A model generated the notes under the pieces. The model searched no databases. It had not been told where the DNA came from and saw nothing but the letters and a program-made list of their open reading frames with translations. A stretch of DNA of 63,947 bases, filler included, from Octopus bimaculoides (taxonomy: Eukaryota): NCBI RefSeq assembly GCF_001194135.2. It is 11 parts of 11 records of this genome, joined end to end, with 100 filler letters (N's around TTAATTAATTAA, not from the genome) between each part and the next. Parts side by side here need not be neighbours in the genome. Positions count along the whole stretch, not along the records: positions 52,089 to 56,513 come from NC_069009.1; 10 more parts are not named here. One strand, written 5' to 3'. This document shows, piece by piece, positions 53,867 through 56,467 of this stretch. The translations under genes were made by a program, and so were the position numbers. Within the stretch, counting starts at the first letter, position 1, and every line of letters starts with the position of its first letter.

Positions 53867-55754
53867 CCAGACGAACGTTCCGTACCACTAAACCAAGGCT
53901 GTTATTTGAGTATGTACGATGTATTTTATGGCTAAATAGTAATTCTGTTTAAGTTAGCGTAACTGAGATGTTTTGGTAACACTTCTTTCTATATTCTGTG
54001 ACTGTCACAATAAAGAAACATTTCTCATGGGACCAGCTCACAATTCACACATGCTTACATTTTTATATTTTCCGTGAAAAATTCACGGGTCCAGCTAGCA
54101 TAAATGTAGCAAGAATGCCATAAATGTTTATGTTAAATTAAGAATTTGCCAGCAAAATCTTATAAAATGACAATGTTCTTCTACAAGAAGTACACGTATA
54201 CATTTTGTAGGAAGGAATTTCAACCATGTTTCGTGGTCTGCTACAACAACTTCTTCATAGGATCCAGTTAGCTCAAGACATCATCAGGAGGAACCACATC
54301 CGGTTTCGGCCCCTACTCTTCTACCGTTTTGATGTGACGGGGCCCCACCCTTTCGGAGGTGTCTTCAGCTCAGGTGTTGAGTGCATGTCTTCTTTCTCCT
54401 GTTCCCTAGCCTCTACAATGCAGCATCAACGAGTGTCAGTGGCTGACTGACTGTCTTGTCAAATTTCCCTTTAAATACCTGTTGCTAGGCTCCATCAGAC
54501 AGCCCCAGCAAGTTGTCACGTGACACTTTCTAAACTTGTTATGTAGGCGGACTTTCGGAATAAATTCAAAACAATAAAAAAAAGTTGATGGGTTATATGC
54601 AGAATTCCGCCCATATCCTAATCCACAATTAATTTTACAAAATATTATGTATTGTAAACATTACCTATTAGTAATTACCTATTATATAAACCAGTGTTTA
54701 CAGCGAAATATCTTTAATTACACCAAATGCCCTTCCAACATCACTACGGTCCAACCCAAAGAAAAATCTGACGGAAACATAAAATGCTCGATGAATATGT
54801 GTGCGTGTTTAAAAGAAACATTTGTATGAAATATATAAAAACACACTGTTAAATGTAGTGGAAATGTTGATCCGAAATGTTTAAGTTTTACTTGAAATAA
54901 GAAAATGGAATTTTGAATCTTTCCAATAATTACTAACTATTGTACTGTTTCGGAAGGGACAATAGAAATTGATGTTTTCGGATGTGGTTTAATGCTGATC
55001 ACGAATGAAGTATTAATTTGGCCACAGATGTTTTCGATTAAAAAAAAAATAAATAAAGTATCAATCTTACCTTGAAAGTATGTGGAATCTGTAGGAGACA
55101 ACTATCGGACCCTTGGTACGTTTCGTTTCTGACGCATCAATTTGTTTTTTTATAAACATTCTTCGTACGCTTAATTTAGAGTAAGACAAAGACTTGGAGA
55201 TAAGGAACAGAAAATAGAAATTAATTGAGAATTGCAACACCTTTTATCCAGTTGTGGGTAATTAATTACTGGTTTGATTAATTAATTTGATTGTATAAAA
55301 TAATTATTGTAAATAATTTATTGTATTTCGCGAAGTATATTAATGAATGAAATACATTTTGATTTATTGTATATCATTTAGCCGTGCACGATAATTACAA
55401 TGCAGGCTACCGATTGCCTTCTTAGTTGTGCTATTCGTTGCTAGGAACTGTGTACGTTAGCTGCTGTTTCTGAATTAAGATGTCACTAGAAGGTGCTATA
55501 GAAGTAGATTCCTGTGGATGCAACATGGTGAGGGAGATATACGATAAAAGGTTTATGCATTTGTGGGATATAACTGTGATCAATTTCAGTCGAGTTATTC
55601 TCATTTTTTTTTAACTCATGCAAAAATAAATAAATAAAAGATATCAACCAAAGATCAATATTGTTCAGTTTCTGACCTGCAACTACTGTCTAAACTTTTC
55701 TCCGGCGACGAGAGTCTACTAGGTAAAAATTAATAGTGATATGATCAAACTTTT

Positions 55755-55967
55755 GTAAATTTTCAGGTTTACACCCGCACGATTTTCACTAGGGTGTTAG
55801 GGTTAGGGTTTTAGGGTTAGAGTTTTAGGGTCAGGGTTAGGGTGAGGGACGGAATTTCCTAACCGTAACCGTAACCCTAAACCCTAACCATAACCCTAAA
55901 ACTAACTCTATAACCCTAACCCTAACACCCTAGTGAAAATCGTGCGGGTGTTAATCTGAAAGTTTAC
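55755..55967. mobile_element. Foldback MITE bearing telomeric repeats, with a 10-bp TSD
   Basis: TCAAACTTTT at 55745-55754 and 55968-55977; TIR of about 56 bp (GTAAA..CACCCGCACGATTTTCACTAGGGTGTTAGGGTTAGGGTT); internal degenerate (TTAGGG)n then (CCCTAA)n. Confidence 0.85.
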
Positions 55968-56467
55968 TCAAACTTTTAACTCAGTTCAAAGGCTGTGGGG
56001 ACATATTTAACTTGTAAAAATGCAATTTTCGTTGTGGTCTGCCATGGAAAAAAATTCTCGCTTTAGGCAAAAGATGTAAAAAAGATCAACATCAGTTCAG
56101 ATCACTCACTATCGACTGGTAGATGCAATTCAAACTTCTTAGGCTCTTTTCAGTATCAGATACTAAGCAGGGCAACTCTAAACTTACCGCGTGTTTTAGT
56201 TTCTTCATAAGAGATCAATAAACAATAATTTACTCACAGCACACACTCACATCCATGTCATAATCATCATCATCCGTTTTTGCATGGGTCAGGTGGAGAT
56301 TTTCCATAGTTGAATGCTCTTGCATTTACCAACAATCTCCTCTTTCCAAACAAAGTAATATTTCCACATAGACAGAAGGTTTTTTTTGTAGAATGTCGGA
56401 AGAGGATGACTCTGCTTGTATGACACTGGCACACGTTAAACTATCAGTCGATAATGTCAAAACAAAG

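What the first reader, a model, noticed from the sequence alone, without database searches (positions are those of the whole stretch)
55745..55977. Telomere-repeat foldback transposon with a perfect 10-bp TSD, mimicking a chromosome-fusion scar
Seen: a 213-bp near-palindrome (55755-55967). Non-telomeric outer TIRs start GTAAA and grade into degenerate (TTAGGG)n followed by (CCCTAA)n. TCAAACTTTT is exactly duplicated on both flanks. Known: head-to-head TTAGGG/CCCTAA is the signature of end-to-end fusions, and 9-10 bp TSDs with G-starting long TIRs typify Mutator-like elements. Inference: a MITE that spreads interstitial telomeric sequence, with G-quadruplex and cruciform potential and possible binding of telomere proteins.
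Basis: partly seen in the sequence, partly recalled or inferred. Interest (0 to 1): 0.8.

Follow-up and report, generated by a model that had tools for sequence, protein, structure and literature searches.

The report
Telomere-repeat foldback transposon in octopus DNA
A 213-base hairpin-shaped mobile DNA element, whose two arms are made of decayed chromosome-end (TTAGGG) repeats, has inserted into non-coding octopus DNA and left a clean 10-base duplication; it looks like a chromosome-fusion scar but is not one, and I could not test whether it is one of many copies.

Summary
Bases 55755-55967 form a 213-bp near-palindrome. Each arm has a 35-bp non-telomeric end (GTAAA...CAC) followed by degenerate TTAGGG units, and the two arms meet head-to-head. 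TCAAACTTTT flanks both sides exactly (chance about 2e-6). As single-stranded DNA it folds at -88 kcal/mol (z = -17.7).

The piece is non-coding octopus DNA: its repeats match Octopus bimaculoides at up to 94% identity.

The odd repeat units occur in the same order in both arms. The arms are therefore an inverted duplicate of one decayed array, not two independent telomeres. Together with the flanking duplication and the small size, this rules out a fusion scar.

The best reading is one insertion of a non-coding foldback DNA transposon. Its 10-bp duplication and roughly 100-bp arms fit the Mutator/Foldback group, which has 8-10-bp duplications and occurs in cephalopods.

The decisive tests could not be run, because no octopus genome was reachable. 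These are copy number, duplications at other copies, empty sites and a coding partner. Only 66 kb of O. bimaculoides was available and it holds no copy. Scans of prokaryotic, viral and metagenome collections found nothing, which says little.

"Spreads interstitial telomeric sequence" therefore remains an inference. Interest is moderate: this is a new member of a known kind.

The parts
55745..55754 (.). Left copy of the 10-bp target-site duplication, TCAAACTTTT
   Evidence: It is identical to 55968-55977 and abuts the palindrome. The chance of such a match is 2.2e-6.
55755..55789 (+). Left non-telomeric terminal inverted repeat, GTAAATTTTCAGGTTTACACCCGCACGATTTTCAC (35 nt). It is the presumed transposase recognition end.
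   Evidence: It mirrors 55933-55967 with 3 mismatches, all within the first 16 nt. The core CCCGCACGATTTTCACTAGGGTG occurs only at the two arms.
55790..55848 (+). Left arm tract of degenerate telomere-type units, with the G-rich strand running 5'->3' towards the centre. It holds 5 exact TTAGGG units and two canonical G-quadruplex motifs, at 55792-55816 and 55828-55848.
   Evidence: Tandem-repeat rows; unit parsing and G-quadruplex regular-expression search.
55849..55857 (.). Short unpaired centre, ACGGAATTT, which is the tip of the hairpin.
   Evidence: The fold has a 16-nt loop centred here. There is no middle domain and no reading frame.
55858..55932 (+). Right arm tract of degenerate CCCTAA units, mirroring the left tract. 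The same variant units occur in the same order, and there are two extra TTACGG-type units next to the centre.
55933..55967 (+). Right non-telomeric terminal inverted repeat. Its reverse complement reads GTAAACTTTCAGATTAACACCCGCACGATTTTCAC.
55968..55977 (.). Right copy of the 10-bp target-site duplication, TCAAACTTTT

Best explanation
This is one insertion of a small, non-coding foldback-type DNA transposon (MITE-like) in non-coding DNA of an octopus.

How it works, by inference: a transposase encoded elsewhere binds the two inverted 35-bp ends, cuts the element out, and joins it to a target cut with a 10-nt stagger. Repair of that stagger produced the TCAAACTTTT duplication. Among known superfamilies, the 10-bp duplication and arms of about 100 bp fit the Mutator-like/Foldback group best (about 0.5 for this assignment, about 0.7 for 'transposase-mediated insertion').

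The telomere-type repeats are cargo inside the arms, not remains of chromosome ends at this locus. Both arms carry the same sequence of variant units, so the palindrome arose by inverted duplication of a single transposon end that already carried a decayed TTAGGG array.

A plausible origin, not shown: an exposed transposon end ending in ...CACTAGGG was healed by telomerase. Sister fusion or fold-back synthesis then produced end-(TTAGGG)n-(CCCTAA)n-end, a molecule with two inverted ends that a transposase can move.
For: Shown here:
- An exact palindrome with an exact 10-bp duplication at its edges, with a chance of 2.2e-6.
- No open frame longer than 30 codons.
- No tRNA, and no Rfam family at its curated threshold.
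- Hairpin z-score of -17.7.
- Variant units are collinear between the arms.
- The G-rich strand points to the centre on both arms.
- The host is an octopod. A window ORF matches an O. bimaculoides protein at 88%, and window repeats match O. bimaculoides chromosome CM046606.1 at 92.7% and up to 94%.

From the literature:
- Mutator-like elements have inverted ends over 100 bp and 8-10-bp duplications (PMC5499845).
- Most foldback elements are assigned to Mutator, and Tetris has 8-10-bp duplications and tandem repeats inside its arms (PMC4079207).
- Mutator-like elements are present in all molluscs analysed, cephalopods included (PMC10294476).
- The cephalopod telomere unit is TTAGGG (PMC13218726).
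Against: - Only one copy has been seen. No second copy lies in the 4.4-kb piece or in 66 kb (12% N) of O. bimaculoides.
- Exact scans of metagenome, prokaryotic-genome and viral collections, including CpG-tolerant patterns, gave zero hits. Those collections are not expected to hold octopus DNA, so this is weak evidence.
- No coding partner with the same ends was found.
- Superfamily assignment from one duplication length is soft. The classic Drosophila Foldback element makes 9 bp, not 10 (own knowledge).
- The telomerase-healing origin is pure inference.
Confidence: 0.7

Rival explanations
1. The insertion is a foldback derivative of a different cut-and-paste superfamily that also makes long duplications. 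Candidates are hAT, Merlin, and P/Galileo-type foldbacks. Merlin, Zisupton and Novosib are enriched in cephalopods.
For: - Foldback architecture evolves independently in several superfamilies; Galileo belongs to P (PMC4079207).
- Merlin, Zisupton and Novosib were found almost only in the cephalopods among the molluscs analysed (PMC10294476).
- Only one duplication has been measured here.
Against: - The duplication is exactly 10 bp, and the bases outside it differ on both sides.
- From my own knowledge, hAT typically makes 8 bp, P 7-8, Merlin 8-9, and Zisupton and Novosib 8.
- The 8-10-bp range is the published range for Mutator-like elements.
Confidence: 0.15
2. The insertion was made without a transposase. 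A palindromic telomere-fusion or hairpin fragment, for example from a sister-chromatid fusion or extrachromosomal telomeric DNA, was captured once at a staggered chromosome break, and fill-in gave the 10-bp duplication.
For: - The head-to-head orientation, with the G-rich strand pointing to the centre, is what a sister-telomere fusion gives.
- Only one copy is known.
Against: - The fragment ends precisely and symmetrically 35 bp outside the repeats on both sides, as transposon ends do.
- End-joining capture rarely gives a clean 10-bp duplication with no extra or missing bases.
- The arms differ by 17% over the full arm alignment, which argues for some history before or after insertion.
Confidence: 0.08
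3. It is a scar of an ancient end-to-end chromosome fusion, or a telomerase-made interstitial telomeric insert at a repaired break.
For: Head-to-head TTAGGG/CCCTAA arrays are the classical fusion signature (own knowledge).
Against: - The whole structure is 213 bp, and the same 10-mer lies on both sides, so the flanks are one continuous target.
- The two arms share non-telomeric ends and the same order of variant units, so they are copies of one array rather than two independent telomeres.
- Telomerase inserts are unidirectional, without inverted ends.
Confidence: 0.01
4. It is a sequencing or assembly artefact, such as a palindromic chimeric read or a missed adapter.
For: Long-read and amplification artefacts do create inverted duplications (own knowledge).
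Against: - The arms are not identical: 92 matches in 111 columns, with insertions or deletions of whole repeat units.
- The palindrome is internal, small, and bounded by a duplicated target within otherwise unique sequence.
Confidence: 0.02
5. It is primarily a hairpin-RNA gene, that is, a microRNA or small-interfering-RNA precursor, rather than a mobile element.
For: Rfam microRNA-precursor models match the hairpin with small E-values: MIR8643 at 53 bits and mir-3718 at 43 bits, on both strands.
Against: - Every match is far below its family's curated score (135 and 78).
- Six unrelated families hit the same hairpin, and both strands score alike. That is what any long perfect hairpin does.
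- This reading explains neither the duplication nor the inverted ends. It is at most a secondary consequence of a transposon insertion.
Confidence: 0.04

Closest known systems
Foldback transposons (Drosophila FB, D. virilis Tetris and its MITE relative DAIBAM, root-knot nematode Tm1)
   Same: They are almost entirely two long inverted arms. The arms have unique outer ends and tandem repeats inside, there is little or no middle domain, and there is no coding capacity. Duplications are 8-10 bp, and most are assigned to the Mutator superfamily (PMC4079207).
   Different: This element is far smaller (213 bp, against kilobases). The internal repeats are the host's own telomere unit rather than element-specific 10- to 220-bp repeats. 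No relatives or partner are known.
Mutator-like elements (maize Mu, Aedes Muta1, animal Phantom)
   Same: They have long inverted ends and 8-10-bp target duplications (PMC5499845), and the superfamily is present in cephalopod genomes (PMC10294476).
   Different: There is no transposase, and no sequence relation to any Mutator-like end could be tested. Membership rests on one duplication length.
Tandem-repeat-containing MITE-like elements of molluscs (pearl in oysters, DTC84 in the clam Donax)
   Same: They are short non-autonomous mollusc elements that carry tandem repeats and can seed repeat arrays. These were seen only in the reference lists; the details are my own knowledge.
   Different: Their repeats lie in one orientation between different left and right modules. 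Many are Helitron-related and lack duplications. They are neither palindromic nor telomeric.
Telomere-bearing transposons of ciliates (Oxytricha TBE1, Euplotes Tec)
   Same: They are DNA transposons whose inverted ends contain the host telomere repeat (own knowledge).
   Different: In those elements the telomere repeats sit at the extreme tips. The elements are kilobases long, encode a Tc1/mariner-type transposase, and make 2-3-bp duplications. Here the repeats lie inside the non-telomeric ends.
Telomere-associated retroelements that end in telomere repeats (endonuclease-less Penelope-like elements such as Athena)
   Same: They are mobile elements that carry short stretches of the host telomere repeat (PMC4522978).
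   Different: They are retroelements with a reverse transcriptase, and the repeats are at the 3' end only. They are confined to chromosome ends and have neither inverted arms nor target duplication.
Fusion-type interstitial telomeric sequence (for example human 2q13)
   Same: It has head-to-head TTAGGG/CCCTAA arrays (own knowledge).
   Different: In a fusion the flanks are two different subtelomeres, there is no target duplication, and the arrays are independent. Here the flanks are one duplicated target and the arms are copies of each other.

Membership tests
MITE (miniature inverted-repeat transposable element) | Short length (under about 800 bp) and no coding capacity | tested here: met
   The element is 213 bp, and the longest stop-free stretch is 30 codons of repeat translation.
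MITE (miniature inverted-repeat transposable element) | Terminal inverted repeats | tested here: met
   The outer arms are 66 nt and 92% complementary, and the whole element is a near-palindrome.
MITE (miniature inverted-repeat transposable element) | Target-site duplication | tested here: met
   TCAAACTTTT, 10 of 10 bases, lies on both sides.
MITE (miniature inverted-repeat transposable element) | Many similar copies at unrelated loci | not testable with these tools
   No octopus genome could be searched. There were 0 copies in 66 kb of O. bimaculoides and 0 hits in the metagenome, prokaryotic and viral collections.
Foldback elements | The arms make up nearly the whole element, with unique outer ends and tandem repeats inside | tested here: met
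   Each arm has a 35-nt unique end followed by about 60-75 nt of 6-8-nt repeat units, and the centre is 9 nt.
Foldback elements | Duplication of about 9 bp (8-10 in Tetris) | tested here: met
   The duplication here is 10 bp, within the 8-10-bp range reported for Tetris (PMC4079207). Classic FB makes 9 bp (own knowledge).
Mutator-like elements (MULE) | 8-10-bp target duplication | tested here: met
   10 bp; the range comes from PMC5499845.
Mutator-like elements (MULE) | Long inverted ends (over 100 bp) | tested here: inconclusive
   The arms are about 95-110 nt, but only because the element is all arm. The conserved unique end is 35 nt.
Mutator-like elements (MULE) | Ends shared with a partner that encodes a MURA-type DDE transposase | not testable with these tools
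   No partner is in reach.
Chromosome-fusion interstitial telomeric sequence | Two independent telomere arrays joined head-to-head between two different subtelomeres, without target duplication | tested here: not met
   The arms share their ends and their variant-unit order, and a 10-bp duplication flanks the element.
Telomerase-made short interstitial telomeric insert | A unidirectional run of near-perfect units at a repaired break, without inverted ends | tested here: not met
   The structure runs in both directions, is degenerate, and has non-telomeric inverted ends.
Helitron-derived mollusc repeat carriers | 5'-TC...CTRR-3' ends, insertion between A and T, no duplication | tested here: not met
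   The ends are GTAAA...TTTAC, and there is a 10-bp duplication.
Rfam microRNA precursor families (mir-3718, MIR8643 and others) | A score at or above the family's curated gathering threshold | tested here: not met
   43 against 78 bits, 53 against 135 bits, and lower for the rest. Both strands score alike.

The most novel reading that the evidence does not exclude
The element is one copy of a multi-copy octopus family that was born when a transposon end was healed by telomerase and folded back. That family has since scattered hundreds or more short, hairpin- and G-quadruplex-forming TTAGGG/CCCTAA blocks through the genome. It would then be a main source of 'interstitial telomeric sequence' in cephalopods, a possible set of dispersed binding sites for telomere-repeat-binding proteins, and a confounder when such blocks are read as relics of chromosome fusion.
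Probability: 0.25. Interest if true: 0.65.

Novelty: new member of a known kind. Interest (0 to 1): 0.4.

Why it matters
Interstitial telomere repeats are routinely read as footprints of chromosome fusions or of telomerase repair. This is a clean, sequence-level example of a head-to-head telomere block that arrived as a mobile insert, as its own target duplication shows. Such blocks can therefore be transposon cargo.

If the family is abundant, it would matter in three ways:
- It affects how telomere-motif scans and fusion inferences are read in cephalopod assemblies.
- It would place fragile, hairpin- and G-quadruplex-prone sequence at many loci.
- It would give a concrete case for how a foldback element can be born from a healed transposon end.

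If it is a single copy, it is a curiosity.

Tried and rejected
1. Exact and CpG-tolerant scans for the end core in the metagenome, prokaryotic-genome and viral collections gave 0 hits.

2. An exact look-up of the 10 longest ORFs of the piece found none on record, so the source contig could not be retrieved.

3. A search with concatenated ORF translations gave one hit, an O. bimaculoides protein, which identified the host. I then spent the second search on that protein, and it returned only itself. The third search, with a LINE ORF from the octopus locus, was meant to sample more octopus loci. It returned one octopus protein that has no contig on record; the named hits among the rest were cnidarians, shrimp and a sea cucumber, and most carried no name. 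The best of those, L002, is not octopus.

4. The 66-kb octopus locus L001 was searched by BLAST, by a profile of the two arms, and by my own scanner for inverted repeats with duplications. No copy was found. It has two trivial telomere-like runs of 2-3 units with no inverted structure.

5. Using translations of the element to find other copies among predicted proteins was rejected. All six frames have stops, and the end-specific stretch is at most 19 residues.

6. Ten literature searches found no paper describing a TTAGGG-carrying MITE or foldback element.

7. My first guess from memory, that a stretch near 52930-53150 looked like a teleost repeat, was wrong as to host. The octopus matches overrule it.

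8. An inner CACTA-type element (CACTAGGG...CCCTAGTG) was considered and dropped, because its flanks are inverted rather than direct repeats.

Full report
**Observation.** The piece (52089-56513) is AT-rich (GC about 35%), has no convincing coding sequence, and ends in a (CA)n run. At 55755-55967 lies a 213-bp near-palindrome. Its outer 66 nt on each side are 92% complementary. The two halves align over 111 columns with 92 matches, and bases 17-56 of both arms are identical.

Each arm starts with 35 nt of non-telomeric sequence: GTAAATTTTCAGGTTTACACCCGCACGATTTTCAC on the left, and the same with three substitutions on the right. It then runs into degenerate telomere-type units. These are TTAGGG-type on the + strand of the left arm and CCCTAA-type on the right arm, so the G-rich strand points towards the centre from both sides. 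The centre is 9 unpaired bases.

TCAAACTTTT sits immediately outside both ends, at 55745-55754 and 55968-55977. The bases further out differ, so the duplication is exactly 10 bp.

**Is it more than chance?** Yes.
- With this piece's composition, two abutting 10-mers match with probability 2.2e-6.
- Only three exact 10-mers recur at 150-300 nt spacing in the whole piece.
- A scanner I wrote for inverted repeats flanked by 8-11-bp duplications returns only this element in the piece.
- As single-stranded DNA it folds into one hairpin of -88.4 kcal/mol, against -26 +/- 3.5 for shuffles (z = -17.7).
- The end core CCCGCACGATTTTCACTAGGGTG occurs only at the two arms.

**Host.** A search with concatenated ORF translations of the piece hit one protein, an 'uncharacterized protein' of Octopus bimaculoides, at 88% identity over the ORF at 54211-54447. 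The 66-kb locus around that gene (L001, chromosome CM046606.1) matches window 54209-54396 at 92.7%. It also carries five copies (69-94% identity) of the SINE-like stretch at 53736-53866. These are dispersed repeats, not the orthologous locus.

The piece is therefore non-coding DNA of an octopod, either Octopus bimaculoides or a near relative. TTAGGG is the telomere unit determined for cephalopods (PMC13218726), so the arms carry the host's own telomere repeat.

**What it is not.**
- *Not a fusion scar.* The same 10-mer flanks both sides, so the flanks are one continuous target. The whole structure is only 213 bp. Non-canonical units occur in the same order in both arms: TGTTAGGG, TTAGGG, TT(T/A)TAG(G/A)G, TTAG.., TTTTAGGG, T(C/T)A(G/T)GG, TTAGGG and so on. 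Two independent telomeres would not share that order, so the arms are an inverted duplicate of one already-decayed array.
- *Not a telomerase-made insert.* Those are unidirectional and lack inverted non-telomeric ends.
- *Not an assembly artefact.* The arms differ by substitutions and by whole-unit insertions or deletions, and the structure is internal to unique sequence.
- *Not a curated RNA family.* There is no tRNA. The Rfam matches to microRNA-precursor models (MIR8643 at 53 bits, mir-3718 at 43 bits, and four more) are all far below their curated thresholds. They come from unrelated families and score alike on both strands, which is the behaviour of any long perfect hairpin.

**What it most likely is.** Inverted ends, an exact target duplication, small size and no reading frame are the anatomy of a non-autonomous cut-and-paste transposon. 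An element that is nearly all arm, with unique outer ends and tandem repeats inside, is the anatomy of a foldback element.

The literature retrieved here says that most foldback elements are placed in the Mutator superfamily, and that Tetris has tandem repeats in its arms and 8-10-bp duplications (PMC4079207). Mutator-like elements typically have inverted ends over 100 bp and 8-10-bp duplications (PMC5499845). They occur in all molluscs analysed, cephalopods included (PMC10294476).

From my own knowledge, the other superfamilies with long duplications make shorter ones: hAT 8, P 7-8, Merlin 8-9, Zisupton and Novosib 8. Ten base pairs therefore points to Mutator/Foldback. One duplication is thin evidence, and I put that assignment at about 0.5.

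**Mechanism (inferred, not shown).** A transposase supplied in trans binds the 35-bp ends and excises the element. For the Mutator-like element Muta1, excision proceeds through hairpins on the flanking DNA. The transposase then joins the 3' ends of the element to a target cut with a 10-nt stagger, and gap filling gives the duplication.

**Origin of the palindrome (inferred).** One transposon end was duplicated in inverted orientation after it had acquired a TTAGGG array. The junction reads ...CACTAGGG|TGTTAGGG, so the unique end finishes in TAGGG, which is a natural seed for telomerase. A break next to a transposon end, healing by telomerase, then sister fusion or fold-back synthesis would give exactly end-(TTAGGG)n-(CCCTAA)n-end with the observed strand polarity. 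It would also create a molecule with two inverted ends. The alternative is that the TTAGGG-like units are subterminal protein-binding repeats of the parent element.

**Secondary properties.** The left arm has two canonical G-quadruplex motifs on the + strand (GGGTGTTAGGGTTAGGGTTTTAGGG and GGGTCAGGGTTAGGGTGAGGG). The - strand has none with loops of 7 nt or less. Cruciform or hairpin potential is very high. Binding of telomere proteins is untested. Both arms keep both CpGs of CCCGCACG, although CpG is depleted in the piece (observed/expected 0.55), and the duplication is perfect. This suggests a fairly recent insertion, though the arms themselves differ by 8% in their outer 66 nt.

**What could not be done.**
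- Scans of the metagenome, prokaryotic-genome and viral collections with the end core, including a CpG-tolerant pattern, gave no hit.
- The ORFs of the piece are not on record.
- My remaining two protein searches did not open further octopus loci.
- In the one 66-kb octopus locus (12% N) there is no copy by BLAST, by a profile of the arms, or by structural scan. That only excludes a very high density.
- Ten literature searches found no description of a TTAGGG-carrying MITE or foldback element. Repbase and Dfam could not be consulted.

**Verdict.** The reading 'transposon insertion that mimics a fusion scar' is well supported by the anatomy. 'Mutator-like' is plausible. 'A family that spreads interstitial telomeric sequence and binds telomere proteins' remains untested inference. 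I file it as a new member of a known kind (foldback/MITE-type DNA transposon), with an unusual cargo and moderate interest.

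Noticed in passing
window 53736-53866 (likely - strand): This is a SINE-like repeat whose reverse strand reads like a tRNA-type promoter box (GCCTTGGTTTAGTGGTACGGAACGTTCG...). Five copies at 69-94% identity lie in 66 kb of O. bimaculoides (L001 at about 975-1097, 2742-2892, 10954-11003, 41274-41323 and 50647-50791). ARAGORN calls no tRNA.
   Followed up: partly
window 54209-54396; L001 51181-51371: This dispersed repeat is 92.7% identical between the window and O. bimaculoides. 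In O. bimaculoides it is annotated as a coding exon of 'uncharacterized protein LOC128248082' (P0001). That gene model has no Pfam domain and no homologue other than itself in the 5.8 billion sequences searched, so it is probably built from repeats.
   Followed up: partly
window 55779-55943, both strands: MicroRNA-precursor models of Rfam (MIR8643, mir-3718 of honeybee, mir-766 and others) match the hairpin with E-values down to 1e-10 but far below their gathering scores. This shows how transposon hairpins can pass as microRNA precursors. Whether octopus small RNAs arise here is unknown.
   Followed up: partly
window 56471-56513 and L001 throughout: A (CA)21 run lies at the edge of the piece. 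CA/TG and related microsatellites are extremely frequent in the octopus locus, with dozens of BLAST hits in 66 kb.
   Followed up: no
window 52309-52367, 52468-52526, 53203-53261: There are three diverged copies (61-73%) of a 59-nt AT-rich unit. The first two are 159 bp apart. The third lies 735 bp further on, beyond a GC-richer block (about 52690-53150). This may be a repeat interrupted by another insertion. Self-BLAST confirmed only the first pair.
   Followed up: partly
L001 24148-25500: Long threonine- and valine-coding (ACN/GTN) simple repeats, and two isolated telomere-like runs of 2-3 units (L001 25031-25053 and 54862-54879) with no inverted structure. These are ordinary short interstitial telomere-like runs, not related to the element.
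   Followed up: yes
L002 (ENA ERZ25878469, contig of 1.0 Mb): A contig filed in a metagenome assembly is clearly eukaryotic. It has 30% GC and a LINE with a reverse transcriptase 60% identical at the protein level to the octopus LINE, and it carries prokaryote-style gene calls on short ORFs.
   Followed up: no
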